A stretch of 64,000 nucleotides of DNA from Pecten maximus (Eukaryota). The notes under the pieces were generated by a model, which made no database searches, was not told the origin of the DNA, and was given only the letters and a program-made list of their open reading frames with translations. Made by a program: the position numbers and the translations under genes. The stretch lies in NCBI RefSeq assembly GCF_902652985.1, contig NC_047023.1:43648001-43712000 (forward strand), in the 5' to 3' direction. Below are positions 3,001-39,439 of this stretch, piece after piece (position 1 is the first letter of the stretch; every line of letters starts with the position of its first letter).

Positions 3001-3095
3001 TGTATAATACACCTACTGTGTTATACTGTATCATGTATAGTACACCTACTGTGTTATACTGTATCATGTATAATACACCTACAGTGTTATACTAT
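1..3095. repeat. 33-bp tandem repeat (TGTATAATACACCTACTGTGTTATACTGTATCG), ~94 copies, nearly invariant interior
   Basis: Direct periodicity; variant units only at the two ends; produces the spurious 985/989-aa ORFs. Confidence 0.98.
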
Positions 3096-3356
3096 ATGGT
3101 GTGAGATATATGACTGATCATCGTAATCACAATACCTTACGTATACAGTATCATTTGCCTATAAACTGGCCAATTTATTATTCTTTTGTTTGTCCATTAA
3201 TTAATAAAACTAAATATTTTACGGTGTTTCTCAACCGAGCTCTCACATAGTCTGATTGTACTACTGACTTGGGTTATCATTTACATGCAGAACTACGATT
3301 AATGAACATAAATGGGACCTATGAAATTCAGATTGACAAGTACCATCACATAACAT

Positions 3357-9005: not shown

Positions 9006-10819
9006 TCCATTGGTCATTCATCCCTGTTGTTGTGCCTCCCCTGTCCTTTGTCTGTCCACCTAGATATGCTGTAACAATTAGTGACTTCACCATATAACAA
9101 CGGAGTAGAAAGAAGGACATCCATGATATTAATATAATATAGATATCTAACACACTACCGATAGTACAATACTAACCTAATCGATTAAAAGTTGATCGAT
9201 CTTTAACAACATCACATGTCCCGTTTTATCCTAGCAATACCTTTATTACAATGTCATGTCAATATCCCAAGAAACAATGCATTTATTCATGAGTATTAAT
9301 ATCAGTACCCTATTGTTTGTAACATGACCGCGTTCATTACTAAATTCATCCCTGAAACATCAGATATAATGTTGTATGAGATAAATCTATATTCAATAGC
9401 CTTGTAAACATGATCATTTTTATATAACATATCCATATCAATGTACGTACTGTTATCCGGATCAAAGTCCGTTACTAGAAAACATTGGCTGTTCATTACC
9501 ATCACAGAATGTCGGGTCCTACGTAAACATCAAAGAACCGAATACCCCTGTGATGAGGCAACACAAGCTGTGAGTATTGAACCCAGACCAGGACCTACAA
9601 ATCGAATTCTCCAGTTTAATCATCTTCGCCATATGAACCTCTGATCAAATATTGCTGTATAGGTTTACCGGCTTTTTATCCCGACAGTAAATCTTTTGTT
9701 TCCTTTGTAATGAATGAGACAATGCATCTCTCCATGTTGTCTTTAGTTGTCGGTGTCTACCCTGACTTAATGTCTGCACGGTTTGTTACCGACTTTGTCA
9801 AGTCTTGGAATCGATATATCCACTTCCGTTAATGGCCCGTCAAAACTGTATTTCATATTTTTTCTATTGATCAAATAAAACTTGACATATATATTGTTAT
9901 TTCCCGATCTGATCCGCAGGTTGTACATTTTAAATAACAATCACAGTCTCTGCTTATAAATCAAGTGTTGAAATAAGAGCTGCTTTTTCCTTCTATATAA
10001 CTAAATGAAGTGGTCGTACAAAAGACGCTCCAGATCCTACAATAAGAAGAGTTAGATAAATAGAACCAAAAATAATTCAACTGCATAATATAGCTGTTAC
10101 CGCTGGTTCGTCGCTCTTTCGGTATCACTACCCTAGCTCTCTTTTTGAGAACGTTACTAGCATTTGGCCTAGGTTTCTATGTAAATCTAATTTTTTGTTC
10201 ATAGTTTGCTCCCGTTTAATCGATTTATATTGGATTTTTTATATTAAATATGTCAGAATGTTTTGTTTGTTTGGAATTTTTTTTCCAGAACTCGTCATTG
10301 GTGTTCATGGCCTGAGGGTTACCATAAAGGAGGCGACCAAAAACCTCGAAATAGGTGAAAAGAAATGTGTTTTTAGACAGAGTATTCTTATACATAATTT
10401 TATAATGTCAATATAGAGAGGCAATAAAACATAAATACAGATGCTATTGAAGACAATTTACATTGCACATATGTTTTTTAAAAAATGAGATATTTTGAAT
10501 CTTCATCTATCAAATGTTAGATGTTTCATTGTACATTAATCCTAATCTACCAACAGAGAAAGAGATGTTTCTAATTAATACTTTGACACTTACATTACAC
10601 AATATTGACAAGCGAAACTGGATAACATTTACCATACTGCCAATAGAGTTAGTACAGACAGACATTCGCTTTACCGCCAGGGCTTCGTTCACAATGTACT
10701 TAGCTGGTACATTCTTTTTGGAGTTCACGGAGGAGCGACAAACAAGCTCAAAGCCAGTCAATAAAACCACATTATAAATTTTATTAATGACGGTAAATTA
10801 ATTTAGTTAAAAAAATGTT

Positions 10820-12815: not shown

Positions 12816-14346
12816 TCTGAGGCTAAATTCCTGGAATTTCTGGTCAGCAAACACTTATGAGTTAGACAAGATATTCCAAACTGAAAAGTGACATCACCAC
12901 GGAAACAAACCATTCCCCCTGTTAATTTAGTTTTGCTCTTATATGAGAGTTATCAGGACATGTGTAAACAATCATATCCTATGTCCTATTTCCTATCCTA
13001 TGTCCTATTTCCTACCCTATGTCCTATTTCCTATCCTATGTCCTAGTTCTTATCCTATGTCCTATTTCCTATCCTATGTCCTATTTCCCTCCCTATGTCC
13101 TATTTCTCCTATCTTATGTCCTATTTCATATCCTATGTCATATTTCCTATCTTATATCCTATTTCCTATCCTATGTCCTATTTCCTATCCTATGTCCTCT
13201 TTCCTATCCTATGTCCTATTTCCTATCCTATGTCCTAGTTCTTATCCTATGTCCTATTTCCTATCCTATATCCTATTTCCTATCCTATATCCTATTTCCT
13301 ATCCTATGTCCTATTTCTCCTATCCTATGTCCTATTTCCTATCCTATGTCCTATTCCCTATCCTATGTCCTATTCCCTATCCTATGTCCTATTTCCCATC
13401 CTATGTCCTATTTCCCTCCCTATGTCCTATTTCTCCTATCTTATGTCCTATTTCATATCATATGTCTGAGGCTAAATTTCTGGAATTTCTGGTCAACAAA
13501 CACTTATGAGTTAGACAAGATATTCCAAACTGAAAAGTGACATCACCACGGAAACAAACCATTCCCCCTGTTAATTTAGTTTTGCTCTTATATGAGAGTT
13601 ATCAGGACATGTGTAAACAATCATATCCTATGTCCTATTTCCTATCCTATGTCCTATTTCCTATCCTATGTCCTATTTCCTATCCTATGTCCTATTTCCT
13701 ATCCTATGTCCTATTCTCTATCCTATGTCTTATTCCCTATCCTATGTCCTATTTCTCCTATCTTATGTCCTATTTCATATCCTATGTCCTATTTCTCCTA
13801 TCCTATGTCCTATTTCCTGTCCTATGTCCTATTTCCTATCATATGTCCTATTTCCTATCCTTTGTCCTATTTCTCCTATCCTATGTCCTATTTCCTATCC
13901 TATGTCCTATTTCCTATCATATGTCCTATTTCTCCTATCCTATGTCCTATTTCCTATCCTATTTCCTATTTCCTATCCTATGTCCTATTTCCTATCCTAT
14001 ATCCTATTTCCTATCCTATGTCCTATTTCTCCTATCCTATGTCCTATTTCCTATCCTATATCCTATTTCCCTCCCTATGTCCTATTTCTCCTATCTTATG
14101 TCCTATTTCATATCCTATGTCCTATTTCTCCTGTCCTATTTCCTGTCCTATGTCCTATTTCCTATCCTTTATCCTATTTCCTATCCTATATCCTATTTCC
14201 TATCCTATGTCCTATCTCCTATCCTATGTCCTATTTCCTATCCTATGTCCTATTTCTCCTATCCTATGTCCTATTTCCTATCCTATGTCCTATTTCTCCT
14301 ATCCTATGTCCTATTTCCTATCCTATGTCCTATTTCCTATCCTATG
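12816..14346. repeat. Tandem duplication (offset 649 bp) of a ~160-bp unique segment plus a (TCCTA)-based ~19-bp minisatellite
   Basis: TCTGAGGCTAAATT...GTAAACAATCATATCC at 12816 and again at 13465, each followed by TCCTATGTCCTATTTCCTA arrays. Confidence 0.93.
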
Positions 14347-14529: not shown

Positions 14530-16330
14530 CATTAAAGTTTATCCTAAAGGAGGTTATTACCCGTGTTTATCTTAAATTATTTATCACACGTGTTTATCCT
14601 AAATAAGGTTATCACACGTGTTTATCCTAAATAAGGTTATCACACGTGTTTATCTTAAATAAGGTTATCACACGTGTTTATCGTAAATAAGGTTATCACA
14701 CGTGTTTATCGTAAATAAGGTTATCACACGTGTTTATCTTAAATAAGGTTGTCACACCTGTTTATCTTAAATAAGGTTATCACACGTGTTTATCTTCAAT
14801 AAGGTTATCACACGTGTTTATCCTAAATAAGGTTATCACACGTGTTTATCTTAAATAAGGTTATCACACGTGTTTATCACAAATAAGGTTACCACACGTG
14901 TGTATCCTAAATAAGGTAATCACACGTGTTTATCCTAAATAAGGTTATCACACGTGTTTATCTTAAATAAGGTTATCACATGTGTTTATAGTAAATGAGG
15001 TTATCACACGTGTTTATCTTAAATAAGGTTATCACACGTGTTTATCGTAAATAAGGTTATCACACGTGTTTATCTTAAATAAGGTTATAACATGTGTTTA
15101 TCTTAAATAAGGTTATCACACGTGTGTATCGTAAATAAGGATATCACACGTGTTTATCTTAAATAAGCTTATCACACGTGTTTATCGTAAATAAGGTTAT
15201 CACACGTGTTTATCTTAAATAAGGTTATCACATGTGTTTATAGTAAATGAGGTTATCACACGTGTTTATCTTAAATAAGGTTATCACACGTGTTTATCCT
15301 AAATAAGGTTATCACACGTGTTTATCGTAAATAAGGTTATCACACGTGTTTATCTTAAATAAGGTTATCACACGTGTTTATCTTAAATAAGGTTGTCACA
15401 CGTGTTTATCTTAAATAAGGTTATCACACGTGTTTATCTTCAATAAGGTTATCACACGTGTTTATCGTAAATAAGGTTATCACACGTGTTTATCTTAAAT
15501 AAGGTTGTCACACCTGTTTATCTTAAATAAGGTTATCACACGTGTGTATCGTAAATAAGGTTATCACACGTGTTTATCTTAAATAAGGTTGTCACACGTG
15601 TTTATCTTAAATAAGGTTATCACACGTGTTTATCTTCAATAAGGTTATCACACGTGTGTATCGTAAATAAGGATATCACACGTGTTTATCTTAAATAAGC
15701 TTATCACACGTGTTTATCGTAAATAAGGTTATCACACGTGTTTATCTTAAATAAGGTTATCACATGTGTTTATAGTAAATGAGGTTATCACACGTGTTTA
15801 TCTTAAATAAGGTTATCACACGTGTTTATCCTAAAAAAGGTTATCACACGTGTTTATCGTAAATAAGGTTATCACACGTGTTTATCTTAAATAAGGTTAT
15901 CAGACGTGTTTATCTTAAATAAGGTTGTCACACCTGTTTATCTTAAATAAGGTTATCACACGTGTTTATCCTAAATAAGGTTATCACACGTGTTTATCAC
16001 AAATAAGGTTATCACACGTGTTTATCCTAATAAGGTTATCACACGTGTTTATCTTACATAAGGTTATCACACGTGTTTATCTTAAATAAGGTTATCACAT
16101 GTGTTTATCGTAAATGATGTTATCACACGTGTTTATCTTAAATAAGGTTATCACACGTGTTTATTATAATAAGGTTAGCATACGTGTTTATCCCAAATAA
16201 GGTTAGCACACGTGTTTATCTTAAATAAGGTTATCACACGTGTTTATAGTAAATAAGGTTATCACACGTGTTTATCTTAAATAAGGCTACCACACGTGTT
16301 TATCCTAAATACGGGTATCACATGTGTGTA
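14530..16330. repeat. 28-bp minisatellite (TTATCACACGTGTTTATCTTAAATAAGG), ~64 copies
   Basis: Direct periodicity; most units carry CACGTG. Confidence 0.96.
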
Positions 16331-16382
16331 TCCAAAAGAAAAACTAGAGAACTGTCGTAAGAAAAATGACATTTCTATAAAA

Positions 16383-16388
16383 TTTATT
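16383..16388 (-). terminator. Putative polyadenylation signal AATAAA of gene A
   Basis: TTTATT on the plus strand about 100 nt downstream of the stop at 16486. Confidence 0.55.
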
Positions 16389-16485
16389 TTTCAAAATGGT
16401 ATATGAAGGATTCACACAATAATGTAAACGAATGTCCATCATCATCTGGCGTCTTCTCAAAGTCGATAACTTGTTTTTGTCTTGT

Positions 16486-18626
16486 TTAATAGGAGCCTAT
16501 GATACAAACAGTGAAAAGGTGTACACATCAAGTTGAACAATTTACAATTATCTTATACATAGAAATGCAATTGGTTGAGAAGAAATTTTACTTTTGTTTG
16601 AATGACATATATGAAATATAATTTTAACAATCCTGGAAGGAAAATGAAGGACGGAAGAATGTACAACATTTATCAGTTATCAATTGTTATTACCTAGCTT
16701 TCCTTTACGTCTGGTACTGACGAACGACATTCCACCGCCTCCCATTCCGCCCATGGCCCCACCTCCCATTCCGCCCATTGAACCTCCTCCCATTCCGCCT
16801 ATGGCTCCACCTCCCATTCCGCCCATAGCCCCACCTGCCATTCCTCCCATAGATCCACCTCCCATTCCGCCCATCGCCCCACCTCCCATTCCGCCCATGG
16901 CCCCTCCTCCCATTCCGCCCATCGCTCCACCTCCCATTCCGCCCATGGCCCCTCCTCCCATTCCGCCCATCGCTCCACCTCCCATTCCGCCCATGGCTCC
17001 GCGTCCCATTCCGCCCATAGCTCCACCTGCCATTCCGCCCATAGCTCCACCTGCCATTCCTCCCATAGCCCCACTTGCCATTCCGCCCATGGCTCCGCCT
17101 GCCATTCCGCCCATAGCTCCACCTGCCATTCCGCCCATGGCTCCGCCTGCCATTCCGCCCATAGCTCCACCTGCCATTCCGCCCATAGCTCCACCTGCCA
17201 TTCCGCCCATGGCTCCGCCTGCCATTCCTCCCATGGCTCCACCTCCCATAGCACCACCTCCCATGGCCCCACCTCCCATAGCACCACCTCCCATGGCCCC
17301 ACCTCCAATAGCCCCGCCTCCCATTCCGCCCATGGCTCCGCCGCCCATAGCCCCACCTCCTATCATTCCACCACCCATACCCCCGCTTCCTATCATCCCT
17401 CCACCCATACCCCCGCTTCCTATCATCCCTCCACCCATAGCCCCACCTCCTATCATCCCACCACCCATACCCCCGCTTCCTATCATCCCACCACCCATAC
17501 CACCACCTCCCATCATGCCACCACCGATTCCATAAGTCGGTATGCCCCCTGTGGAGCGATAAAATGTCCAGCTATTTCCTGGTATCATTGCACACATCCC
17601 GCTAGATATCCCCCCACCGATTCCATAAAAAGGAATGGCGGTGCTGCTTATCATGCCGAAATCGCTGCCACCACCAGCCATTCCACTTCCGCCGGCCATC
17701 ATTCCACCACCAGCCATGCCACTTCCGCCGGCCATCATTCCGGCACCAGCCATGCCACTTCCGCCGGCCATCATTCCGGCACCAGCCATTCCACCGCTGC
17801 TAGACATTCCTCCACCACTGGACATCATCCCTGAACCGGCAGTGGCGGGGAATATTATACCTCCAGAGCCTCCCCCAGCCGCCCCAGCAGAACCTGACAC
17901 AATTTTGGTAATTGCCGATGGACCCTTACCTAAATAGCAAACCCGTCAACGTTTGTAATATTGTGATATACTGCACTCCTTTTCTACTAATTAATACAGT
18001 AGAGATAATAATGCAGCCAATATCAATTATGCGATTTTCGATATAAAAAGATAAGCAGATATCTATTGTCTATATATTTCCATAATGATAGAAACTTAAT
18101 GTGATCCTTCAGCACGATTGAAGCCCTCTGACAAGAGTGAATAATCCATTATGTCTTAGAAAGGTCTATCACGTATCAACCCGACAAACAACTTTTACTT
18201 AGCAGAGATAGTGTTAAAGGAATCATAATATATCGGATAATAAAATAAACATGGAGAATTATCTAAATGACCTGGTAAAAGAGTTCGTTTATATTCTACA
18301 TGAATGACATTTTAACGATGAGACGTAATTAGTTCTTGGTTAATATATTATTAGATGTTGATGAGGTCTGAGTTGTCGTTTATGTTTGAATGTTTTAAAG
18401 TAGTATGATCTGTCCTGAGTATATCCAGGTTATTGAGAGACTATGGTCTAAGCAGATATATTCGTATGCAACTTTTAATAGAGATAATTCCATCTCCGCC
18501 ACTGGGATTATTTATATAAATAAAGACGTTTGTATCCCTGAGTAATCTTTATCTGTACTTACCTCTGACAGTGCCAGTACATACCGCATAACAGAAGAGA
18601 AACGTTAACGCTAGATGGCGCCCCAT
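16486..18626 (-). CDS. Gene A: secreted Gly/Met/Ala-rich repetitive structural protein (abductin/ligament-like), 436 aa; coding exons 18626-18563, 17929-16694, 16496-16486
   Basis: Signal-peptide exon MGRHLALTFLFCYAVCTGTVRG (ag|AAAATG; donor G|gtaagt); phase-1 acceptor tttag|GT at 17929; repeats GGMAGGAM, GGMGGGAM and GGGAM with synonymous codon variation; donor G|gtaata at 16694 joins the terminal exon GSY* (atag|GC TCC TAT TAA). Total 1311 nt, in frame. Confidence 0.9.
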
Positions 18627-19455
18627 TTTCTAAAAATAAATTTCTGGCATTATTATAAACTAAGAGACTATCATGAAATAGAAATGTACAATAAATGCTT
18701 TGGATAACTTAGTGATGATGAGTCTTAAGGTGAATCTGTAATGTATCTATATCTATGTAAATACGCATTATAAAAAGACGTGGGCTTTATTACAGATAGT
18801 ATGGCAGATTGTTGATAAAAATGGGTTGTATGATTTATTAAAGTATGTCCTCACAAAGAAAAATAAAGCAAATATTTTATTTTGGTTAAGCATTTAAAGT
18901 ATTGTAATTTCAGAATACACGAGGTGTTAATGACTAAAGATTAGGGAAATCGAGGATTACTCTTGTACTGCTATTATTGATAATCAAGTAAATTAAGGGT
19001 TGGAGTTAGCGCATACAACCTATTTACTTTGTGTAATCATACCCGCATCAACAAAATGATCCATCAAATGTCAGCATTAATCACTCCAGCTCGAGTAATT
19101 GGTTTGTTTTAATTATATATAATAGTACACAATTTAATAGATCATTAACATCATTTCAGTTTGGACAATAAGAAAGCGTGAATGGATTATCCTGTTACTC
19201 CACAAAATAAAGGTATGCGAATGCATGCGATTATTGCACAGATACATATACGTAGAAATTGCAAGCACTTGTTTTAAGATTATGTGTTGTATGTTATAAA
19301 CTGAAGACTTTTCAAGAGCATGGTGAATACAATAACTTAGGAACACATTAAATTAATTTAGAAGCATTCAGTAAACATAAAGACAGTATAATTTGGTAAT
19401 TTATTTGTATTTAATGATATTATAAATGTATATTATAAACGTTCCTTTTCCTTAC

Positions 19456-19520
19456 CTGTTAATCGGACAGACGCTCCGACATGGATGTGGACGCGTTGTA
19501 TCTGATAAAGGATATTTATA
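19456..19520 (-). promoter_or_regulatory. Gene A TATA box (TATAAATA, 19520-19513) and short non-coding exon 1 (about 19490-19456)
   Basis: Strong donor CAG|gtaagg at 19456, 64 nt downstream of the TATA start; same geometry as gene B. Confidence 0.72.
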
Positions 19521-20090
19521 TGAACCAACAAGGAAGATATTTTACTATCTTAATTAAATGCTGTATCGAATGCATAAAAACTGTTTAAACATGCATGGGG
19601 ACCGTTGTCCCCTAACCTGTCGGCCCGCTAGACATGTCGAACAAGACAACATGACTACAGCCCATACTGATTATAATCAATGCAGTGGTCTGTGACAGCC
19701 GAATGATTTACTAAACCAGGCTTTTCTTCAAATTGAAATAATTGATCCTTGTGTATTTGGTATGATTCATTTCAAGTTTCTCTTTTTTTGTTTTAACAAC
19801 ATGCAGCAAACATGGTATAGTGGTGAGCTATAAAAACTACATTCGGCCCAACATGTCTCGATACATAAGTAAACAGTGACATTTTTACAGCATTAAACAT
19901 CCCCACAACAGTCGGGGTCACATGAGGACGGTAATGGCTACTATGGTTGTTTGTGACAGACAGAGACGTCTGGTAGATATTTTAAATCTGATTTCCTAGA
20001 AAGATATTTATAGAATGTTTGACTTCCTTCATCCATAACAGAAAGTACTGATCGATGTGCTCTAACAATGAATACCATTAGAGTACATCT

Positions 20091-21035
20091 TTATAGCTTC
20101 TGGGTAATTACTGTGAATGTCTCAGGGATATTTATAACTTCTGGGTAATTACTGTGAATGTCTCAGGGATATTTATAGCTTCTGGGTAATTACTGTGGAT
20201 GTCTCGGGGATATTTATAGCTTCTGGGTAATTACTGTGGATGTCTCGGGGATATTTATAGCTTCTGGGTAATTACTGTGGATGTCTCGGGGATATTTATA
20301 ACTTCTGGGTAATTACTGTGAATGTCTCAGGGATATTTATAGCTTCTGGGTAATTACTGTGGATGTCTCGGGGATATTTATAGCTTCTGGGTAATTACTG
20401 TGAATGTCTCGGGGATATTTATAACTTCTGGGTAATTACTGTAAATGTCTCAGCGATATTTATAGCTTCTGGGTAATTACTGTGAATGTCTCGGGGATAT
20501 TTATAGCTTCTGGGTAATTACTGTGTATGTCTCAGGGATATTTATAGCTTCTGTGTAATTACTGTGGATGTCTCGGGGATATTTATAGCTTCTGGGTAAT
20601 TACTGTGAATGTCTCGGGGATATTTATAGCTTCTGGGTAATTACTGTGGATGTCTCAGGGATATGTATAGCTTCTGTGTAATTACTGTGGATGTCTCGGG
20701 GATATTTATAGCTTCTGGGTAATTACTGTGGATGTCTCGGGGATATTTATAGCTTCTGTGTAATTACTGTGGATGTCTCGGGGATATTTATAGCTTCTGG
20801 GTAATTACTGTGAATGTCTCGGGGATATTTATAGCTTCTGGGTAATTACTGTGAATGTCTCGGAGATATTTATAGCTTCTGGGTAATTACTGTGTATGTC
20901 TCAGGGATATTTATAGCTTCTGTGTAATTACTGTGGATGTCTCGGGGATATTTATAGCTTCTGGGTAATTACTGTGAATGTCTCGGGGATATTTATAGCT
21001 TCTGGGTAATTACTGTGAATGTCTCGGGGATATTT
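20091..21035. repeat. 41-bp minisatellite (TTTATAGCTTCTGGGTAATTACTGTGGATGTCTCGGGGATA), ~23 copies
   Basis: Direct periodicity. Confidence 0.96.
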
Positions 21036-22124
21036 TACAGTTGCACCTCGTGTTGCTAGTTTGCGGGGACAAACCCTCACGAAAAATTGCTTTAAAACGT
21101 TTCGTAGTAGACCTGCACACTTTTAAAATAACGCATTCGTCTTTAAAATATACACCTAAGTGTAATGGTAAACACTTAACACATAAATATAATGATTCAC
21201 ATTAACCACATATATCTACAATAAAATCTGTACTAGGGTAAAAGAACGTCCGCTCAGTCTAATCATTTTCCTGTACCAGATAAATTATGAAAATATATAT
21301 CTACAGAAAACTTCGGGAAATTGATTGATTCCAAGAATACCCTTAGAGTTCTGTGTTTAAGCATATATTTTGAATTATTCTTAAATTAGATTAAGTCTTC
21401 ACTTAAGGAAATCACATTTAGCTATAACTTATTGCAGCTGATATGATTATAACTGTTCGCTAATCTGGCCACCATGTTTCTTTCTCAAACATAATATTCT
21501 GTTCAGATTCTAGGAAATGAACAATCTGAAGAAGTGTTTAAAGATTAATTTGTATCTATGCACATCAGGCGCCATTTTATGGAGAGAGATCTTAGTTACG
21601 AAGTGTTGATTAACTGGGGGCAGACAAGTTGATCCAGGAGTATAACATAAACCTTACTTCCTCGTATACTCCACGGTACAGGATGTCTCCTCAGAGATCA
21701 AACAGCCTTACCATATAGACACTACTTTCATTTTCACCACATCTATCAGATAGTTATCTGTGTGTGATGGTTTTATATTCCGTGTGGTAGCACTTTTCGA
21801 TATTCCATTTGTGGTTTTCTAACAAATTCACGGAACAAGCTTGAGGCTGGCAGTATCATCGATGGCCAGACAAAACGGCACTTAAAGTATTTTTAATTTC
21901 ATTGACATTTCACAAAACCAAACACAAATATGCATGTTTAGCCGATTGCAGAGTAACAATAAATTGCGAGAAATAATGACACATCGTCACAATTGAGGAC
22001 ATTACTGTGATATCAATGTTTGTACGTGGTGCTTTATATATTGTAAATATTGTACATTGAAGTCGACCACTTGAAAGAATAGACTTGCGACTCAAAGTGT
22101 CATCAACCCTAAGTAAAGTCTTTA

Positions 22125-22385
22125 ATTATTGTTATTCATTATTAGTATAAATTATTGTTATTCATTATTAGTATAAATTATTGTTATTCATTATTAGTAT
22201 AAATTATTGTTATTCATTATTAGCATACATTATTGTTATTTATCATTAGTATAGATTATTGTTATTTATTATTAGTATAAGTTATTGATATTTATTATCA
22301 GTATAAATTATTGATATTTATTATTAGTATAGATAATAGTTATTTATTATAAGTATTTTTTTTGTTATTTATTGTTAGTATAGGC
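22125..22385. repeat. 26-bp AT-rich minisatellite, ~10 copies
   Basis: AATTATTGTTATTCATTATTAGTATA periodicity. Confidence 0.88.
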
Positions 22386-22732
22386 AAATAAAAGATTGAG
22401 AGATGATAAACTATGAAGTGTTATACTGTAGAACGCCATCACAAGTACATGTGATGTGTTATACATGTAACATGTTATATGATGAAAAATGGCGGAATTA
22501 TTTTATTTGCTGTCAATCTTAGTAAATGAACACTACATACTATAGTTGATATTTAATTTATCCATGCTTGTTTATTCTTTTGAAACTCAATATTTAACGT
22601 TTTTAAATGTTTTGAGTTATGGTGTTCAGGCATCTCCTCATCCGTATTTACATTTCTCTCGATCTTGTTTGGTTTTCATCAGTCGCGCCTAGGTATCAAT
22701 AGAAGGATGGAACAGTTGTATTGTGTCCCTAG

Positions 22733-22774
22733 CATCACTGAGGAGTCCTAGAAGGACGAAACAGCTGTAGGATG
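22733..22774 (+). ncRNA. Minimal type I hammerhead ribozyme motif (Penelope/retrozyme type)
   Basis: CATCA-CTGAGGA-GTCC(tagaa)GGAC-GAAA-CAGCTG-TA-GGATG: CUGANGA and GAAA cores, 4-bp stem II, palindromic stem III, GUA triplet, CATC/GATG stem I; degenerate copies on each side. Confidence 0.72.
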
Positions 22775-23298
22775 TCTCTTACATCACTGACGAGGCTTAG
22801 AAGGACAATCTGTTATACTGGTTTATTTTTTTGTTTTTTTTTGTTTTTGTTTTCTAAATATGTCACTTTGATAAATATGAACAAGTTTGACTTCTGTTAT
22901 TTCAGGAAATTGACATATGACGGAGATAGCCGAAACAGGGACACTAACAATGGCCATTAATAAGAAACCCGTACCAAGCACAATTATATTCAGATCTAAT
23001 TAATTTACTTTTATTGTCTAATCATGGTTGCTTTTGTTAACTGTATTGTGTACTCAATAGTACATAACTTGTTTAAGTGACATTTTATCCGGGAACAAAA
23101 ACCCGCTTTGGAAGGATTAGTGAAATGTATGTGTAGAGGAGGTGATCTTATATAGAGAGGATTCCCCGTTGTCTTAGCATTTGGCATGTAGGAAGATGTA
23201 TATATTTCGTGAAACATACAACACCAACGATGATCTCGTGAGAATAATTAAATTTCTGATCGACGATATCTCTTGACTTTGGGTACCAAATTTTCCAC

Positions 23299-23437
23299 AG
23301 CGGGCTGAAGCTAGCAACAGATTCGATATTCGTTCTTAGGAATTCGAATAACAAATCTCCAGTCAGTTGCTGGCAGCGGATTTGTTATTCGAATCCCCAA
23401 TAACGAATAATGAATCCGCTGCTAACGTCAGCCCGCT
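23299..23437. mobile_element. Foldback/MITE-like palindrome (~139 bp)
   Basis: AGCGGGCTGA...ATTCGAATAACAAATC is complementary to GATTTGTTATTCGAAT...TCAGCCCGCT. Confidence 0.75.
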
Positions 23438-23595
23438 ATTTTCAACAGATTACTTGCATAGCCAAAGGAACAAAAATAGCCCCTCTGTTGGCCGATGTTT
23501 TACCGATGTTGAGTTAAGGGCCTGTTATAATGTCGGATATATATAAGAAAAAGAAATCTGTTCTTGCGAAGGTGAATGCATAAAAAATAACAAAA

Positions 23596-23750
23596 CAAAA
23601 CAAGACTTTGCCGCAAGGCCTTTTAGCTCTCTCAGGCTTCTCCAGGCGGACCAATAATAATTCAAAATAAGAATGGGTGAAAGTTTGTAGGGTCCCCCTG
23701 AAGAACCATGAGAGGGCAGAAAGGCCTAGTGACGAAGTCTTTTGTTCTTT
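23596..23750. mobile_element. Second foldback/MITE-like element
   Basis: AAGACTTTGCCGCAAGGCCTTT...GGACC is imperfectly complementary to GGTCC...AAAGGCCTAGTGACGAAGTCTT. Confidence 0.65.
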
Positions 23751-24677
23751 TGTTATCTTTTATATATATATACAAACATCTAGGTCTATGGGTATGACAT
23801 TCTTGTTTAGAGATGGCCAATTCTAAACTTTTCGAGGCCTACTGAGTTGTGAGTTTTCATTAGATGATAATATTAGTTAATGATTAGGTATTTTTTTAAA
23901 CAATACATGTGTACATGCAATGTGCAGACTAACATTTTTTGAGGTCCAAATGTACTTAGAAAGCTTCTCTTTACAAACCACCTTGTCCGGTTCTTCTGTG
24001 CTTGCTTGCGTTGCTTTTATAGACAGATTTCACTGCATTTTCTTCCAGCAAATGGTGCACACTCAATTTCTTTTTTTCTAAATGTGTGTAGTGAGCGTTC
24101 AGGTACCATAAAATCTCGGTATTCCTAGTTAGCGAGGTCATATTCGAGTATTCAAAGTAACCGAACATATTGTTATACAGAGTTTAAGCATCACTGCAAT
24201 ATAGACTTTGTGAAAGAAACTCGGGGTGAACTGAAAGTTTGTAGGGGCAGAACAGCATTCCGAATTAAATAGACAAAATCGCATTATTGTGTAGAGACAA
24301 AATTCGATACACACTAGCATCAATTTTCTTCAACATAAATGACACAACTTTAAAAAATTGAAATATTATAGCAGTAATGTCTTTGGTGATATGATGAATA
24401 AACAAATTGATAAAAATTCTTATCAATCAATTAGAGTGTCTAATTAACAACACAGTATATTCATTCACCGAAGTTAATGATGATGGTACCTTTTTTAAAG
24501 GTCTTGACGTTTTAAGAAGTTAATCATTTCCAATATTCCACATGTCGCTTTGACAGAGACGTCATAACCAATAGACGCCATATTGACAGCACAGAAGGTC
24601 TATATAACAAATAACTATAATATAATTTTAGATGCGCTGTGGCTGACTACTAAAGTATATAATTCGTAAAAGACATT

Positions 24678-25468
24678 CTTTAGGTTCAGTTAATGTGTCT
24701 TTAGAATCCGTTGACGTGTCTTTAGATTCCGTTGGTGTGTCTTTAGAATCCGTTGACGTGTCTTTAGATTCAGTTAATGTGTCTTTAGATTCAGTTAATG
24801 TGTCTTTAGATTCCGTTGATGTGTCTTTGGATTCAGTTAATGTGTCTTTAGATTCAGTTAATGTGTCTTTAGATTCCGTTGATGTGTCTTTAGATTCCGT
24901 TGATGTGTCTTTAGATTATGTTGATGTGTCTTTAGATTCCGTTGATGTGTCTTTAGATTCCGTTGATGTGTCTTTAGATTCCGTTGACGTGTCTTTAGAT
25001 TCCGTTGACGTGTCTTTAGATTCCGTTGATGTATCTTTAGATTCCGTTGATGTGTCTTTAGATTTCGTTGACGTGTCTTTAGATTCCGTTGACGTGTCTT
25101 TAGATTCCATGGACGTGTCTTTAGATTCCGTTGACGTGTCTTTAGATTCCGTTGATGTGTCTTCAGATTCCGTGGACGTGTCTTTAGATTCCGTTGATGT
25201 GTTTTCAGATTCCGTTGATGTGTCTTTAGATTTCGTTGACGTGTCTTTAGATTCCGTTGACGTGTCCTCAGATTCCGTTGACGTGTCTTTAGATTCAGTT
25301 GATGTGTCTTTAAATTCCGTTGATGTGTCTTTAGATTCCGTTGACGTGTCTTTAGATTCCGTTGACGTGTCTTTAGATTCCGTTGATGTGTCTTCAGATT
25401 CCGTTGACGTGTCTTTAGATTCCGTTGATGTGTCTTTAGATTCCGTTGACGTGTCTTTAGATTCCGTT
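24678..25468. repeat. 21-bp minisatellite (TCTTTAGATTCCGTTGATGTG), ~38 copies
   Basis: Direct periodicity; source of the VSLDSVD and STESKDT pseudo-ORFs. Confidence 0.93.
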
Positions 25469-26828
25469 GTTATCATAAACAGGTCATCGCCTTTATCTGA
25501 TCTAGTGTATCGGTTGTTGTTGTTGATTCACTCTTCTGGAGCACCTGGTCATATTCTCTATATAGTTTAGGGGTCCCTTAATTTATCTATGTTTTGTTTC
25601 AATGCTTTTAGTTAAGATATTGTTCTCGTTTTTGCCATCGGTATTCCATGTGTTTTAGCGTTCGTTTTGTCGATTCTGAGTCACGGTTCACTTATCACTC
25701 GGTATTCTTAATCCAGCATTTCCTAACAGGTATCGCTATTATAAATACTCGGGACATGTTGTATGCCTTATACAGGGGTATACATATAATGTGAGCAACA
25801 TGTATATTTCTCATTGTGGATCAATCCCCTTCTCATCTAAAACTATTATAATACATTACAAGTGAACTATAATATTAGTGATAGCTATTAGTCATCATGC
25901 ATTTTGTCAGTTATGATTCTCCGAAGGAAATAGAAAAGAAACCAATCTGAGTATGATTGTGGTGGTTAAGTAAATTTTAGACAACATGGCTTTCAGATGA
26001 GTTGCAAAAGTTACTGGTGGGATATATAATATGTTCCTGAGCATTTTGGAGCATCCAAATACAGATTGAGACTCGTTTCAGAGTATCTACATTATATCTA
26101 CAGCTCTATTGTAATTAAGGTATTTAAATCTGGTTATATATTTAACCTTAACATTACATCTACAGCTCTAGTGTAATAAAGGTATTTAAATATGGTTATA
26201 CATTTAACCTTAACAAACTTCACTGAAAGGAACGACATTCTCATCGATATCAGCTGGTTTTCTAGTTATCTGTGATTTCTTTGCAATCAATTAAAAAAGT
26301 GTTATTTATTTGACAAATTAAAATATATACAGTATATATGTAATCCTTTGAGATCGCTATCTTATAAACTTGTATTGTATTCACGTCGTTTAATTTTTAA
26401 ACTTTCAAACAAATTTTGTTCGATTTTGTGCAAAACGTTATACAATATAGTTTAACACCTAGAGCCGAGTCATTGTTCTCCTCGTTCTAAGTGTGACGAA
26501 GTACATTGTTTGTATATATCCAAGTTCGTATTCATACTCATGTCTGTCCATAGTGTTATAACCCGAATAGGAACTTTATATAGTGACACTTCAGCGCTAA
26601 TGTAAGTATATATTGATGTTCGTCTTGTGTTATATGTTTTAAAGAAATGGTTCGATACACAAAATCAATAAGAAAATCGATATTTTTTCTGGCAATGACG
26701 TTTGTTTTTAATAATTTAACTGGTATATATAACACATATAGGTCTTGTTACAAAGGATTATATCTGAGGCATTGTTTGTCCTGTTCATCCGTGCGTCTTC
26801 TTTACTTCCGGTCCAGAGAGATCCATAT

Positions 26829-28630
26829 TTAATAGGAACCTAAAATGTAGACGGAGGAAAGTTTTATTAACATTGAAGACTTGGCCAGAAGGGTGAATCT
26901 TAAAATTGTCGTTCATTTTAAATTGTTGTCGACGTTAAGATTTAAAAAAAAATCATAGATGTTGTCGTAGATATGTCAGATATTCTTTATCTTAAAGAAA
27001 TTGAACAAAATATCAATTATAGAATTATCATGGCTATATAACGATTAGATTAAATTAAACAATATCATTAAAAAGAGTGTTCCATTACCTTTCTTTTTTC
27101 CACTGATGCTGATGGCGGGTCCAGCTGAGCCCATGCCTCCCATGGAACCCATGCCGCCCATGGAACCCATACCTCCCATACCACCCATACCTCCCATACC
27201 ACCCATACCTCCCATACCGCCCATACCTCCCATACCGCCCATACCACCCATGGAGGAACTGCCTCCCATTGATCCCATACCTCCCATTGATCCCATTGAT
27301 CCCATACCTCCCATTGATCCCATACCTCCCATAGAACTCATACCTCCCATAGAACTCATCCCTCCCATAGAACTCATTCCTCCGCTCATACCTCCCATGG
27401 CACTGCTGCCCATTGATCCCATGCCTCCCATACCTCCCATACCTCCCATTCCGCCCATTCCGCCCATTCCTCCCATACCGCCCATTCCTCCGGTAGCACC
27501 CATGGAGCCCATACCTCCCATGGAACCCATACCTCCCATGGAACCCATACCTCCCATAGAACTCATACCTCCCATAGAACTCATACCTCCCATAGAGGTC
27601 ATACCGCCAGTAGATCCCATACCTCCCATAGAGCTCATACCGCCCATTCCTCCCATACCTCCCATAGAGCTCATACCGCCCATACCACCCATACCTCCCA
27701 TAGAACTCATACCTCCCATAGAGCTCATACCGCCTGTAGATCCCATACCTCCCATAGAACTCATACCTCCCATTGAGCCCATGCCTCCCATACCGCTCAT
27801 ACCTCCCATAGAGCTCATACCACCACCAAAGGGATATGACGAGTAGACTGTAGAGTATATGGGAGTTCCTATGGACATTGAGTGGCGTTTGTAATAAATT
27901 GATCCACTGCTTGATGGCATTTGCCAGGGTGACATGCTAGAGCTTCGTCTGTTGTACCAGTTATACCATGGTGACGTCATTGCTGACATTCCACTTCCGC
28001 TCCCTGACCAACCGGATCCTGAGCCTGTATAAGATAAAGTAGTCTTAACACATAGTCTCTACATCTGATCCTGGCAATAAGGTATTATATCTATAACAGA
28101 CAAATATGTAAGTAGAGGAGGAAATCTACAAGTATCCTTATCAAATATCCGAAAGTTATACTACCTCACAAATTAAAAGATATATACTTTGCTAATAGTT
28201 TAGCCTTGTTTTATCAAATTTAGAATTTCGGTAACATGTCTGTATCCTCCACCTATGTGTATGTATGTTTGGTTATGGCTCTTGAGATACTTAACCTATG
28301 TTGCTACCCTAGAAATACGCCAAGCTTATACTTCTACTTGAGCCAAGTATCATTGCCATTATGGCTATCCCTACATACGCCTTCGCATGAGTTTTGAGAT
28401 AGTCCACATGTATCTATATAATGTCAATAACACATCTTCTATAATCAGTCTTCTATAACTGTTTATAATAAACATAGAATGTTATAATAATGTATACAAT
28501 ATATTATGATATTTTAAGAGTTTTAAGTGGAAAAGGGGGTATGTCTGTCCAAACAGTTCTCACCCCAGAACGTGCCCATTCCTGGCTGGGCGACATAGCA
28601 GGCAAGTATCGCGGCGATCAACAGCATCAT
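26829..28630 (-). CDS. Gene B: secreted Gly/Met/Ser-rich repetitive structural protein (paralogue of gene A), 337 aa; coding exons 28630-28564, 28024-27089, 26839-26829
   Basis: Signal-peptide exon MMLLIAAILACYVAQPGMGTFWG (cag|AAAATG; donor G|gtgaga); phase-1 acceptor acag|GC at 28024; GGM, MGGMSS and MGGMGS repeats; donor AAAG|gtaatg at 27089 joins the terminal exon GSY* (tttag|GT TCC TAT TAA). Total 1014 nt, in frame. Confidence 0.9.
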
Positions 28631-30247
28631 TTTCTGGAAAAAAAATACGAAATAATTTGTACGTGAAGCTGATATACCGATGATTTTTTTTTAAACAATC
28701 ACGAGTAAATGTCAATCCGTTTGTACCTCTTCAATGGTCTCCGTATAAATCTATACTTTTTGTTCGTTTTTGCTCTCATCTGATCAATTGTGAGTTACAA
28801 TTACAGATTCATTTTAATATAGGTCTGATGTTTCCGTAAAAGACCAACGATTTATTTGGAAAATTAATTTACATGTATTTTGGGGGAAGTTTGATGCCTT
28901 GAATTTTTATTTAAACGTTTACATCATATTGCACTGTCTTGAGCATTGAATGTCAGGAAATACAGCAAAGTTAAATGATAGTGAAACAAGCCTGACAGTT
29001 GACGGCAACACATAAATGTCAACTGAGTAATGATCTAAAAGTCAGTTTTTAGACTACGATAAATATTACAGCTCGCCGTTAGCTGATGAAGTATTTGTAA
29101 CTGATTATTTCTACACAACAGAAGCTTTCTGACAATAGAAAATAAATCGTAACTACAGATTGTATCTACTCGATGGTATTTGTTTTTGGGAATCTGCGTT
29201 TACTAGAATATTTACTGATTAACGCATATTTATTTTTGTTTTGACATCAAAATGTATTACTTGATAAAGATAAAATATGTTTTTCCAAAGAACAGGCTTA
29301 ATAAGAATTTTACTTATGACGAAGCCAGTTAATATACCCTAATTTGTCTCGACGTTGTGTCTTAATATACCTTAACCAGTTAAATCAGATTGTATGTTAT
29401 GAATAACAAATATGTATACATATATACTCCTTCTGGGAATAATGAAGATGGCTTGATCAGTTTCTAATTGGAAATCATTTCCTCGTGTTCAGTTTTTACC
29501 TACAGAGAATTATAATTTCTTGAAGACAGGTAAATATTAGAATACACCACGGTCCTACACGAACTGAATCCTGATTAAGTTTTACCATTATGGTTTTGTT
29601 TTACTTTGATATGAACTGGTTTTCCCGATGTTGAACACTATAGTGATAAACCTTACAAATTCTGGTTTTAATTCATAATAAAAACCAATATGTAACATCC
29701 TCTATTCTGACATTGATTAATATGTCTAGATGTACAGTTCATTTCACGTGAGTAACATTAAGTGTTTTATGTCCAAAACGTTTACGAATACCAATACTAA
29801 GAGATAAAGTGGGTTCATACCTCAAATACAAAGTATACGTGTTTAGTTTGATCATGCTAATCATTTATACAAAATGAGTGGTTTAGTAATAATTAAATAA
29901 ATGATACAATCTTGTTCTGAAGTCAGCTGTCAAGTATCATTTACGAACGGAAAGTAAATATGGCGAAAATATTGTCATATCATTTTTAATGACACATAGC
30001 TTCACTTCAAGATTTGGTATTAATCTTGTTATCTCAATCCCAGGTGAAATATATGTATCACTTATTGTTCTAAGATATAACAATAATCATATATGTTTCA
30101 CCTGATAGCGAAAGTATTTACATACCATATAGGTATTACTTAAAAACTAAATATATTAATTTACAATGTTAATTATACGTAGATTATTTATATACCTAAT
30201 TACCTAAGAACTATATACTAATGATTTAGTATAACAGTTTGTCTTAC

Positions 30248-35499: not shown

Positions 35500-37119
35500 A
35501 TACTACATAACTTAACAGGCTGTAGGAGACAATAGATAGTTCTGGTGTCGTGTCTACATAACTTAACAGGCTGTAGGAGACAATAGATAGTTCTGGTGTC
35601 GTGTCTACATAACTTAACAGGTTGTAGGTGACAATAGATAGTTCTGGTGTTGTGTCTACATAGACTACAGGGAGACAATAGATAGTTCTGATGTTGTGTC
35701 TACATAGACTACAGGGAGACAATAGATAGATCTGGTGCCGTGTCTACATAGACTACAGGGAGACAATAGATAGTTATGGTGTCGTGTCTACATAGACTAC
35801 AGGGAGACAATATATAGTTCTGGTGTCGTGTCTACATAGACTACAGGGAGACAATAGGTAGTTCTGGTGTCGTGTCTACATAGACTACAGGGAGACAATA
35901 GATAGTTCTGGTGTCGTGTCTACATAGACTACAGGGAGACAATAGATAGTTCTGGTGTCGTGTCTACATAGACTACAGGGAGACAATAGATAGTTCTGGT
36001 GTCGTGTCTACATAGACTACAGGGAGACAATAGATAGTTCTGGTGTCGTGTCTACATAGACTACAGGGAGACAATAGATAGTTCTGGTGTCGTGTCTACA
36101 TAGACTACAGGGAGACAATAGATAGTTCTGGTGTCGTGTCTACATAGACTACAGGGAGACAATAGATAGTTCTGGTGTCGTGTCTACATAGACTACAGGG
36201 AAGACAATAGATAGTTCTGGTGTCGTGTCTACATAGACTACAGGGAGACAATAGATAGTTCTGGTGTCGTGTCTACATAGACTACAGGGAGACAATAGAT
36301 AGTTCTGGTGTCGTGTCTACATAGACTACAGGGAGACAATAGATAGTTCTGATGTCGTGTCTACATAGACTACAGGGAGACAATATATAATTCTGGTGTC
36401 GTGTCTACATAGACTACAGGGAGACAATAGATAGTTCTGATGTTGTGTCTACATAGACTACAGGGAGACAATATATAATTCTGGTGTCGTGTCTACATAG
36501 ACTACAGGGAGACAATAGATACAATGTAGTTCTGGTGGCGTGTCTACATAGACTACAGGGAGACAATAGATAGTTCTGGTGTCGTGTCTACATAGACTAC
36601 AGGGAGACAATAGATAGTTATGGTGTCGCGTCTACATAGACTACAGGGAGACAATAGATGGATCTGGTGTCGTGTCTACATAGACTACAGGGAGACAATA
36701 GATAGATCTGGTGTCGTGTCTACATAGACTTCAGGGAGACAATCGATAGTTCTGGTGTCGTGTCTACATAGACTACAGGGAGACAATAGATAGTTATGGT
36801 GTCGTGTCTACATAGACTACAGGGAGACAATAGATAGATCTGGTGTCGTGTCTACATAGACTACAGGGAGACAATAGATAGTTCTGGTGTCGTGTCTACA
36901 TAGACTACAGGGAGACAATAGATAGATCTGGTGTCGTGTCTACATAGACTACAGGGAGACAATAGATAGTTCTGGTGTCGTGTCTACATAGACTACAGGG
37001 AGACAATAGATAGTTCTGGTGTCGTGTCTACATAGACTACAGGGAGACAATATATAGTTCTGGTGTCGTGTCTACATAGACTACAGGGAGACAATAGATA
37101 GTTCTGGTGTCGTGTCTAC
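35500..37119. repeat. 44-bp minisatellite (GGAGACAATAGATAGTTCTGGTGTCGTGTCTACATAGACTACAG), ~36 copies
   Basis: Direct periodicity; the first three units are a longer variant. Confidence 0.96.
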
Positions 37120-38454: not shown

Positions 38455-39425
38455 GTGTTTTTCAGTTTTGAAACGTGGAACATAATTGCGTTCATTGATG
38501 TTCTCAGTTTTAAAGCGTGAAATATAAATATGTTCCTTGTAGTTCTCAGTTACAGAACGTGAAATATAAATATGTTCCTTGTAGTTCTCAGTTACAGAAC
38601 GTGAAATATAAATATGTTCCTTGTAGTTCTCAGTTATAGAACGTGAAATATAAATATGTTCCTTGTAGTTCTCAGTTACAGAACGTGAAATATAAATATG
38701 TTCCTTGTAGTTCTCAGTTACAGAACGTGAAATATAAATATGTTCCTTGTAGTTCTCAGTTACAGAACGTGAAATATAAATATGTTCCTTGTAGTTCTCA
38801 GTTACAGAACGTGAAATATAAATATGTTCCTTGTAGTTCTCAGTTACAGAACGTGAAATATAAATATGTTCCTTGTAGTTCTCAGTTACAGAACGTGGAA
38901 TATAAATATGTCCCTTGTAGTTCTCAGTTATAGAACGTGAAATATAAATATGTTCCTTGTAGTTCTCAGTTACAGAACGTGAAATATGGATATGTTCCTT
39001 GTAGTTACATGTATCAGTTACAGAACGTGAAATATAATGTTCCTTGTAGTTCTCAGTTACAGAACGTGAAATATAAATATGTTCCTTGTAGTTACATGTA
39101 TCAGTTACAGAACGTGAAATATAATGTTCCTTGTAGTTCTCAGTTACAGAACGTGAAATATAAATATGTTCCTTGTAGTTACATGTATCAGTTAAAGAAC
39201 GTGGAATATATATGTAAATATGTTTATTGCGGTTCTCTGTCATTAAAGTTTTCAGTTTTAGAACGTGGAATATAAAGGTGTTCATTGTAGTTTTCAGTTT
39301 TAGAACGTGGAATATAAAGGTGTTCATTGTAGTTTTCAGTTTTAGAACGTGGGATATAAAGGTGTTCATTGTAGTTTTCAGTTTTAGAACATGGAATATT
39401 AAGGTGTTCGTTGTGGATCTCAGTT
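38455..39425. repeat. 42-bp minisatellite (AGAACGTGAAATATAAATATGTTCCTTGTAGTTCTCAGTTAC), ~22 copies
   Basis: Direct periodicity. Confidence 0.94.
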
Positions 39426-39439
39426 TGAGGATTTGATAT

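What the first reader, a model, noticed from the sequence alone, without database searches (positions are those of the whole stretch)
16486..27089. Conserved terminal coding micro-segment adding G-S-Y-stop after a basic patch in genes A and B
Seen: both genes have a phase-1 donor straight after a basic run (RRKGKL|G, SGKKK|G). Some 200-250 nt downstream each has AG followed by G[CT] TCC TAT TAA (16496-16486; 26839-26829). The 11 nt are nearly identical although the repeat domains have diverged completely. Known: shematrins end in RKKKY-type motifs, and abductin ends, as I recall, in KGY. Inference: a Lys/Arg patch with a terminal Tyr is a selected cross-linking (DOPA/dityrosine) or assembly tag. 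Intron retention would give Tyr-less isoforms (GNNN*, GNGTLF...*).
Basis: partly seen in the sequence, partly recalled or inferred. Interest (0 to 1): 0.8.

Follow-up and report, generated by a model that had tools for sequence, protein, structure and literature searches.

The report
Shared Gly-Ser-Tyr end exon, scallop genes
Two neighbouring scallop genes for secreted, rubber-like glycine/methionine-rich proteins each finish with a separate last exon that adds just Gly-Ser-Tyr after a basic patch; public RNA data confirm the splice in one gene, and the tag probably serves as a chain-end cross-linking or anchoring site, which is untested.

Summary
Both minus-strand genes end their large repeat exon with a phase-1 GT donor right after a basic run (RRKGKL|G, SGKKK|G). 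AG|G(C/T)TCCTATTAA follows 197 nt and 249 nt downstream, at 16496-16486 and 26839-26829.

For gene A the splice is shown. Contigs from two public runs of two studies join 16694 to 16496 (GT..AG). Coverage stops 16 nt after an AATAAA, and nothing lies beyond it. Unspliced RNA contigs are also present.

Gene B could not be tested with reads. Its site is the best acceptor available, and an exact copy of the gene A template there has a chance expectation of about 1e-5.

All 43 genomic copies of the 13-mer were inspected. Only these two follow Gly/Met-rich exons. The non-repeat heads and the terminal exons have no other copies in the genome.

Tyr, Trp, Lys and Arg sit almost only in the head and the tail of each protein. 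This matches the abductin layout (Tyr at both ends) and the shematrin/KRMP "basic run then Tyr" C-terminal signature. The cross-linking role is inference.

No orthologues could be retrieved. The scan noted a comparable C-terminal mini-exon in another scallop Gly/Tyr-rich family elsewhere in this genome.

The parts
18563..18629 (-). Gene A signal-peptide exon. It starts AG|AAAATG, has the ATG at 18626-18624, encodes MGRHLALTFLFCYAVCTGTVR, and ends in a phase-1 donor (G|GTAAGT).
   Evidence: Read from the sequence. Its splicing was not tested with reads.
16694..17929 (-). Gene A large phase 1-1 exon of 411 full codons (17927-16695). It has a Tyr/Phe/Trp-bearing head, then about 270 residues of Gly/Met/Ala repeats, and ends SFVSTRRKGKL followed by G|GT.
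   Evidence: G 48%, M 19%, A 13%. The exon end is covered by RNA contigs.
16497..16693 (-). Gene A last intron, 197 nt, GT..AG, phase 1. If retained, the protein ends GNNN*.
   Evidence: Spliced out in X1 record 5 and X3 record 7. Also present as unspliced contigs in X1 records 2 and 3 and X2 record 6.
16367..16496 (-). Gene A terminal exon. It holds GC TCC TAT (completing Gly, then Ser, Tyr), stop TAA at 16488-16486, a 3' UTR, and AATAAA at 16388-16383. The transcript ends near 16367.
   Evidence: X1 record 1 covers 16367-16499. No run has coverage at 16000-16366. Sequence.
28564..28633 (-). Gene B signal-peptide exon. It starts AG|AAAATG, has the ATG at 28630-28628, encodes MMLLIAAILACYVAQPGMGTFW, and ends in a phase-1 donor (G|GTGAGA).
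   Evidence: Read from the sequence. Not tested with reads.
27089..28024 (-). Gene B large phase 1-1 exon of 311 full codons (28022-27090). It has a Trp/Tyr/Arg head, then Gly/Met/Ser repeats, and ends AISISGKKK followed by G|GT.
   Evidence: G 39%, M 25%, S 21%.
26840..27088 (-). Gene B predicted last intron, 249 nt, GT..AG, phase 1. If retained, the protein ends GNGTLFLMILFNLI*.
   Evidence: Sequence. Among all candidate acceptors this one has the richest polypyrimidine tract (0.85). No read evidence was obtainable.
26690..26839 (-). Gene B predicted terminal exon. It holds GT TCC TAT (Gly, Ser, Tyr), stop TAA at 26831-26829, a 3' UTR, and ATTAAA at 26712-26707. The 3' end near 26690 is a guess.
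   Evidence: Sequence. It is an exact copy of the gene A template AGGNTCCTATTAA.

Best explanation
Genes A and B are tandem, same-strand genes about 10 kb apart with one shared architecture. A signal-peptide exon begins AG|AAAATG and ends in phase 1. One large phase 1-1 exon encodes an aromatic/basic head and a long uncharged Gly/Met-rich repeat. A last exon has only 8 coding nucleotides plus TAA. Splicing of the last intron completes a Gly codon and appends Ser-Tyr-COOH directly after a Lys/Arg patch. This last exon is homologous in the two genes and has been kept, while the heads, the repeats, the intron and the UTR have diverged beyond recognition. That is the pattern expected for a selected C-terminal tag.

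Shown: the sequence features, the gene A splice and poly(A) end, and the coexistence of unspliced gene A RNA.

Inferred: the gene B splice. Also inferred is the function. Tyr and basic residues are almost confined to the two chain ends, so the proteins look like end-functionalised elastomer or matrix chains. The terminal Tyr, by oxidative Tyr/DOPA chemistry, and the neighbouring Lys, possibly with Met, would tie the chain ends into an insoluble network or onto a scaffold. This is what has been proposed for abductin and fits the shematrin/KRMP basic-run-plus-Tyr signature.
For: The coordinates and reading frames were verified. The 13-mer is exact in both genes, with 0 expected in the window. 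Only these 2 of 43 genomic copies follow Gly/Met-rich frames. The junction 16694|16496 appears in contigs of two runs from two studies, coverage ends 16 nt after AATAAA, and there is no coverage in the 367 nt beyond. The chance expectation of the template downstream of gene B is about 9e-6, and the GSY acceptors have the strongest polypyrimidine tracts. Every Tyr and Trp, and every Lys and Arg but one (R309 in gene A), lies in the head (residues up to 132 in A, up to 65 in B) or in the last 6 residues of the large exon. There is only one acidic residue in total. The flanking intron and UTR are not alignable, so the identity is not a recent duplication or gene conversion tract. Literature: the RnKmY C-termini of shematrins and KRMPs (PMC3896809, PMC11358866); abductin with Tyr at its extremities and proposed dityrosine or Lys-Met links (PMC9999432, PMC13052691); Met-rich insoluble cross-linked ligament and shell proteins (PMC7591529).
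Against: The gene B splice is untested. There are only two sequences and three codons, so selection cannot be measured. An unbiased similarity test of the two downstream regions is not significant by itself (P about 0.15). No orthologue or abductin sequence could be retrieved to test conservation across species. The tissue of expression is unknown because the runs are coded. No chemical evidence exists for any modification of the terminal Tyr. Gly-Ser separates the Tyr from the basic patch, unlike shematrin and KRMP.
Confidence: 0.7

Rival explanations
1. The tail is a processing signal rather than a cross-link tag. The basic patch is a convertase-type cleavage site, and in gene B the S-G-KKK motif resembles a cleavage-and-amidation signal. 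GSY would then be removed from the mature protein. Alternatively, the basic patch alone is the functional part (binding to acidic matrix, chitin or mineral) and the Tyr is incidental.
For: Both tails contain runs of 2-3 basic residues immediately upstream of GSY. In gene B a Gly precedes KKK. Nothing in the data distinguishes a retained tail from a removed one.
Against: If the tripeptide were discarded, there would be little reason for all three residues and the dedicated exon to persist while everything around them diverged. Shematrin and KRMP families keep a terminal Tyr after basic runs (PMC3896809). The gene A motif RRKGKL is not a canonical amidation site.
Confidence: 0.15
2. The conservation is at the nucleotide level. 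The acceptor-proximal 13-15 nt would be kept for splicing and terminal-exon definition, or as a 3'-end regulatory element, and the encoded G-S-Y is a by-product.
For: The identity includes the synonymous positions of Ser and Tyr, the choice of TAA, and the base after the stop (TAGG.TCCTATTAAA, 14 of 15 matches). The island straddles the acceptor.
Against: The one difference is at the synonymous Gly position, as expected under protein-level constraint. Terminal exons are normally defined by the acceptor plus the poly(A) signal, not by a specific 11-mer. The other 41 genomic copies of the motif show no such context.
Confidence: 0.08
3. Only gene A uses the exon. In gene B the match is a decaying relic or chance, and the protein ends at the unspliced stop (27045) with a hydrophobic tail GNGTLFLMILFNLI.
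For: There are no read data for gene B. Unspliced RNA is present for gene A, so retention does occur in this gene pair.
Against: The match is an exact 12 of 12 specified bases, with a canonical AAG|GTAATG donor, an 85% pyrimidine tract, the correct phase, and ATTAAA about 115 nt after the stop. The chance expectation is about 1e-5.
Confidence: 0.07

Closest known systems
Abductin (scallop hinge-ligament elastomer; Cao, Wang & Bayley 1997, as described in PMC9999432 and PMC13052691)
   Same: It is a secreted scallop protein, extremely Gly-rich with unusually high Met and almost no charge or Pro in the repeat. Tyr and Lys are restricted to the chain ends. Cross-linking through terminal Tyr, or through Lys and Met, has been proposed.
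   Different: Abductin is 136 aa with the decapeptide GGFGGMGGGX. Genes A and B encode about 436 and 336 residues, have no Phe in the repeats, and use other repeat units (GGMGGGAM-type; GGM/SSM triplets). Their long aromatic heads are absent from abductin. Sequence homology and the abductin gene structure could not be tested here. An unchecked scan note places a six-gene abductin cluster elsewhere in this genome.
Shematrins and KRMPs (pearl-oyster Gly-rich shell matrix proteins)
   Same: They are secreted, tandemly duplicated, rapidly diverging low-complexity Gly-rich proteins. Each keeps a conserved signal peptide and a short C-terminal signature of basic residues ending in Tyr (RKKKY, RRKKY, RRRKY; RKYKY, RPKKY, RRKY).
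   Different: Their repeats are Gly/Tyr (GnY) with no Met richness, and the Tyr follows the basic run directly. Here the repeats have no Tyr at all, Gly-Ser (or Leu-Gly-Ser) intervenes, and the signature is split by a phase-1 intron. Whether shematrin genes are split in the same way could not be checked because the paper is not held.
Met-rich insoluble ligament and shell proteins of Pinctada (LMP, NU-5, MRNP34; PMC7591529)
   Same: They are Met-rich, low-complexity, strongly cross-linked insoluble matrix components. The ligament members lack acidic regions, as do genes A and B.
   Different: No sequence comparison was possible. Those proteins are described with Met/Pro/Gln-rich regions and other domains, and no GSY tail has been reported.
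Scallop Gly/Tyr-rich family with a C-terminal mini-exon (scan note s1-787178, same genome)
   Same: It is a secreted Gly-rich biomaterial-type gene family in the same genome whose C-terminus is completed by a separate small terminal exon that is spliced in real transcripts.
   Different: That exon completes a hydrophobic tail, a putative anchor, not a basic-patch-plus-Tyr tag.

Membership tests
Abductin | Very high Gly with unusually high Met, and few charged or Pro residues | tested here: met
   Gene A has G 48%, M 19%, P 1%. Gene B has G 39%, M 25%, P 2%. There is one acidic residue in total. Abductin is reported at 58 mol% Gly and 1 mol% Pro (PMC9999432), so Gly is lower here.
Abductin | Decapeptide repeat GGFGGMGGGX in a short (136 aa) protein | tested here: not met
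   There is no Phe in either repeat domain: the F positions in gene A are 26, 90, 100, 122 and 402, and in gene B only 65. The repeat periods are 24 nt and 18 nt. The large exons alone are 411 and 311 codons.
Abductin | Tyr residues at the extremities of the mature chain | tested here: met
   Tyr occurs only at residues 101-132 (A) or 20-63 (B) of the large exon, plus the spliced-on terminal Tyr. The abductin layout is taken from PMC9999432 and PMC13052691.
Abductin | Detectable sequence homology to Argopecten abductin, and expression in ligament-secreting mantle | not testable with these tools
   No abductin sequence was returned by any protein search. The run metadata are coded.
Shematrin / KRMP | C-terminal signature of a basic run ending in Tyr (RnKmY) | tested here: inconclusive
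   The tails are RRKGKL-GSY and GKKK-GSY. A basic run and a terminal Tyr are present, but they are separated by 2-3 residues. The signature is as listed in PMC3896809.
Shematrin / KRMP | Gly/Tyr-rich GnY repeat domain (with a Lys/Trp N-terminal domain in KRMPs) | tested here: not met
   There is no Tyr in either repeat domain. The repeats are Gly/Met/Ala or Gly/Met/Ser.
Any Pfam family | A match above threshold | tested here: not met
   There were 0 families for gene A, gene B and gene C at E up to 1.

The most novel reading that the evidence does not exclude
Splicing or retention of the last intron is a regulated switch. It decides whether each Gly/Met-rich chain carries a cross-linkable C-terminal Tyr (spliced: ...GSY) or not (retained: ...GNNN, or a hydrophobic 14-residue tail in gene B). 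The mantle could thereby tune cross-link density, and so stiffness and resilience, of a secreted elastomeric material at the RNA level.
Probability: 0.1. Interest if true: 0.7.

Novelty: new variant of a known kind. Interest (0 to 1): 0.45.

Why it matters
How abductin-type Gly/Met elastomers are cross-linked is still unknown (PMC9999432). These two larger relatives-by-design have diverged in head, repeats, intron and UTR, yet they share a short C-terminal tag: the basic patch at the end of the large exon plus the Gly-Ser-Tyr added by a dedicated last exon. That tag marks a short, testable candidate site for chain-end chemistry. It also links the Met-rich elastomer class to the basic-run-plus-Tyr signature of pearl-oyster shell proteins. 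The three-exon layout (signal peptide, variable repeat, tag plus UTR, all in phase 1) would allow the repeat to change quickly while secretion and tagging are kept. For recombinant elastomer design, it suggests including the native end groups.

Tried and rejected
There are 43 copies of AGGNTCCTATTAA, and all were inspected. The one other candidate (L015) is a GA-rich simple repeat. No further family member was found.
- **Own-genome protein searches with both large exons.** These gave many hits. The 30 loci retrieved for gene B were minisatellites or unrelated Gly-rich frames.
- **Own-genome searches with the two terminal exons and the two non-repeat heads.** Only self matches were returned.
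- **Word-index protein searches.** Three were run: whole gene A, the gene B head, and the C-terminal 150 residues of gene A. They returned only metagenomic GGM-repeat proteins.
- **Full HMMER search of 1.84 billion representatives with gene A.** It gave 365 compositional hits. None of the best 150 was a Gly/Met-rich relative, and none had a basic-plus-Tyr end.
- **Pfam.** No family matched.
- **Literature.** The abductin paper and the shematrin/KRMP evolution paper are not held.
- **Reads for gene B.** These were not possible, because the single read-laying run went to gene A.
- **Steps deliberately left out.** Exons were searched separately by reference. A retrocopy check for the joined form in genomic DNA was therefore also left out.
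Full report
**Source.** The window is C9:43648001-43712000 of a 918.3-Mb assembly with 3,983 contigs. Earlier follow-up notes of this scan call the organism the king scallop. That fits the assembly size and the gene content. I did not verify the species independently.

**Observation.** On the minus strand, gene A's large exon ends ...TRRKGKL followed by G|GTAATA, with the last exon base at 16694. Downstream...CTTTTCACTGTTTGTATCATAG|GC TCC TAT TAA starts at 16496 and the stop ends at 16486. Gene B ends ...ISISGKKK followed by G|GTAATG, with the last exon base at 27089. Downstream...CTTTCCTCCGTCTACATTTTAG|GT TCC TAT TAA lies at 26839-26829. The introns are 197 and 249 nt.

**Is it more than chance?**
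- AGGNTCCTATTAA occurs exactly twice in the window, with none in 100 shuffles.
- Across the genome it occurs 43 times. The reversed control pattern occurs 84 times, so the word itself is not over-represented.
- I inspected all 43 sites. Only the two in the window follow a Gly/Met-rich open frame. One apparent extra, L015, is a GA-rich simple repeat.
- A hypothesis-free comparison of the two downstream regions gives a best window of 14 of 16 matches, with P about 0.15 under a first-order Markov null. Similarity alone would therefore not carry the claim.
- Once the gene A exon is established independently by RNA, the right question is how often its 13-mer template would fall within 400 nt downstream of gene B on the same strand. 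From the genomic frequency, the expectation is about 9e-6.
- Among all AG sites downstream of each donor that would give a short phase-compatible ending, the GSY acceptors have the highest pyrimidine content (0.75 and 0.85).
- Outside a roughly 15-nt island around the acceptor and the coding segment, the introns and 3' UTRs do not align meaningfully.

**RNA evidence for gene A.** One run search was allowed. It found six holders in four studies, all kept as Logan contigs and labelled 'RNA?'. I laid X1-X4 on 16000-16800.
- X3 record 7 (166 nt) joins 16407-16494 to 16692-16769, skipping 197 nt. Its single 'other letter' is what aligner placement of the canonical 16496|16694 junction would produce.
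- X1 record 5 gives the joint as CT..AC on the plus strand with 'cut +1'. That is GT..AG on the minus strand at 16694|16496.
- X1 record 1 covers 16367-16499 and stops 16 nt past AATAAA (16388-16383).
- No run has any contig on 16000-16366.
- The spliced joints, a poly(A)-consistent end and silence beyond it show that these runs behave as RNA, despite the label being a guess.
- Unspliced contigs also occur: X1 records 2 and 3, and X2 record 6, which runs continuously over 16470-16800. There is no coverage past the poly(A) site, so these are more likely unspliced or intron-retaining RNA than genomic contamination. Contigs cannot give ratios.
- The unspliced contigs carry T>A at 16688. This would change the retained-intron tail from GNNN* to GNYN*.

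**Gene B.** I also did not search the joined junction in genomic DNA, so no retrocopy check was done.

**Architecture.** Both genes have a short exon that begins AG|AAAATG and encodes a hydrophobic signal-like peptide ending in a phase-1 donor. These are MGRHLALTFLFCYAVCTGTVR|G at 18629-18563 and MMLLIAAILACYVAQPGMGTFW|G at 28633-28564. One large phase 1-1 exon follows (17929-16694 and 28024-27089), then the terminal exon. Gene B has ATTAAA at 26712-26707. The acceptor directly before AAAATG suggests an untranslated first exon upstream in both genes, which I did not locate. The shared layout, strand, adjacency and terminal exon argue for common descent. However, the heads and repeats no longer match each other or anything else in the genome.

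**Protein features.** Gene A's large exon is G 48%, M 19%, A 13%. Gene B's is G 39%, M 25%, S 21%. Every Tyr and Trp, and every Lys and Arg except R309 in gene A, lies in the head (up to residue 132 in A and 65 in B) or in the last six residues of the large exon. The two proteins have one acidic residue between them. With the spliced-on Tyr, each chain is an uncharged flexible Gly/Met block with aromatic and basic groups at both ends. Pfam finds nothing.

**Comparison with known proteins.**
- Reviews describe abductin as a 136-residue scallop hinge protein with GGFGGMGGGX repeats, 58 mol% Gly, high Met, and Tyr at the extremities. Its cross-links are unknown. Dityrosine through the terminal Tyr, or Lys-Met sulfilimine bonds, have been proposed (PMC9999432, PMC13052691).
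- Shematrins and KRMPs of pearl oysters end in RKKKY/RRKKY/RRRKY and RKYKY/RPKKY/RRKY (PMC3896809, PMC11358866).
- Met-rich, strongly cross-linked insoluble proteins dominate the Pinctada ligament and shell matrix (PMC7591529).
- Genes A and B share the composition and the end-group logic of abductin, and a loosened form of the basic-run-plus-Tyr signature.
- They fail the defining repeats of both families: there is no Phe-containing decapeptide and no GnY repeat. I therefore file them as a new variant of the Gly/Met elastomer or matrix class, not as abductins or shematrins.

**Relatives.**
- All three word searches and the exhaustive HMMER search returned only compositional look-alikes.
- Among these are signal-peptide-bearing metagenomic proteins with GGMGG repeats.
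- No mollusc orthologue or abductin sequence was recovered, so cross-species conservation of the tag remains untested.
- Scan notes, unchecked by me, report a six-gene abductin cluster elsewhere in this genome (s1-792043). They also report another Gly/Tyr-rich family whose C-terminus is completed by a spliced mini-exon (s1-787178).
- Those notes suggest that separately encoded C-terminal ends are a recurring design in scallop biomaterial genes.

**Mechanism and confidence.**
- I hold with high confidence (about 0.9) that the terminal exon is real and homologous in both genes.
- I hold with about 0.85 that gene B uses it.
- I hold with moderate confidence (about 0.45) that its purpose is chain-end cross-linking or anchoring through Tyr and the adjacent Lys/Arg.
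- The main rival is that the basic patch is a processing or binding site and GSY is dispensable or removed.
- The most novel reading still open is that intron retention is used to set the fraction of chains with a cross-linkable end.

Noticed in passing
window 16688: All unspliced RNA contigs (X1, X2) read A instead of T on the plus strand. This is intron position +6 on the coding strand (GTAATA to GTAATT). In a retained-intron transcript it would change the tail from GNNN* to GNYN*. It is probably a polymorphism between the reference animal and the sequenced animals.
   Followed up: partly
window 14537-16332: A 28-nt minisatellite of 64 copies at 91% identity begins about 35 nt beyond the gene A poly(A) end. 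The window is unusually dense in minisatellites: 1-3102 (33 nt x 94), 7027-9006 (19 nt), 12975-14346, 20090-21035, 24677-25469 (between genes A and B), 35630-37119, 38472-40757, 41155-42142 and 55203-58652 (46 nt x 75). Many of them give long spurious ORFs.
   Followed up: partly
window 42676-44556 (-): Gene C is a 626-codon open frame with poly-Gly tracts and a PPIPQMP-type repeat. It ends ...GDNDDDDRK* within the frame and has no GSY exon, so it does not share the tag. It has no Pfam match.
   Followed up: partly
window 18629-18624 and 28633-28628: Both signal-peptide exons start with the same AG|AAAATG junction after a strong pyrimidine tract. This implies an untranslated first exon upstream in each gene, and it is a second small conserved junction between the two genes.
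   Followed up: no
P0151, P0152, P0153, P0155 (metagenome proteins): These are small signal-peptide-bearing proteins from metagenomes with (G)GGMGGM(A/G)GG repeats much like the gene A repeat. They probably reflect compositional convergence rather than homology.
   Followed up: no
G000 C13:36329591-36330244 and 36359427-36360893 (L036, L038, L041, L043, L047, L049): These are long arrays reading GGMSS(H/Q) in one frame, with in-register TGA stops in L036-L041 and L049. They are 67-72% identical to the gene B repeat at the protein level. They look like a minisatellite rather than a gene.
   Followed up: partly
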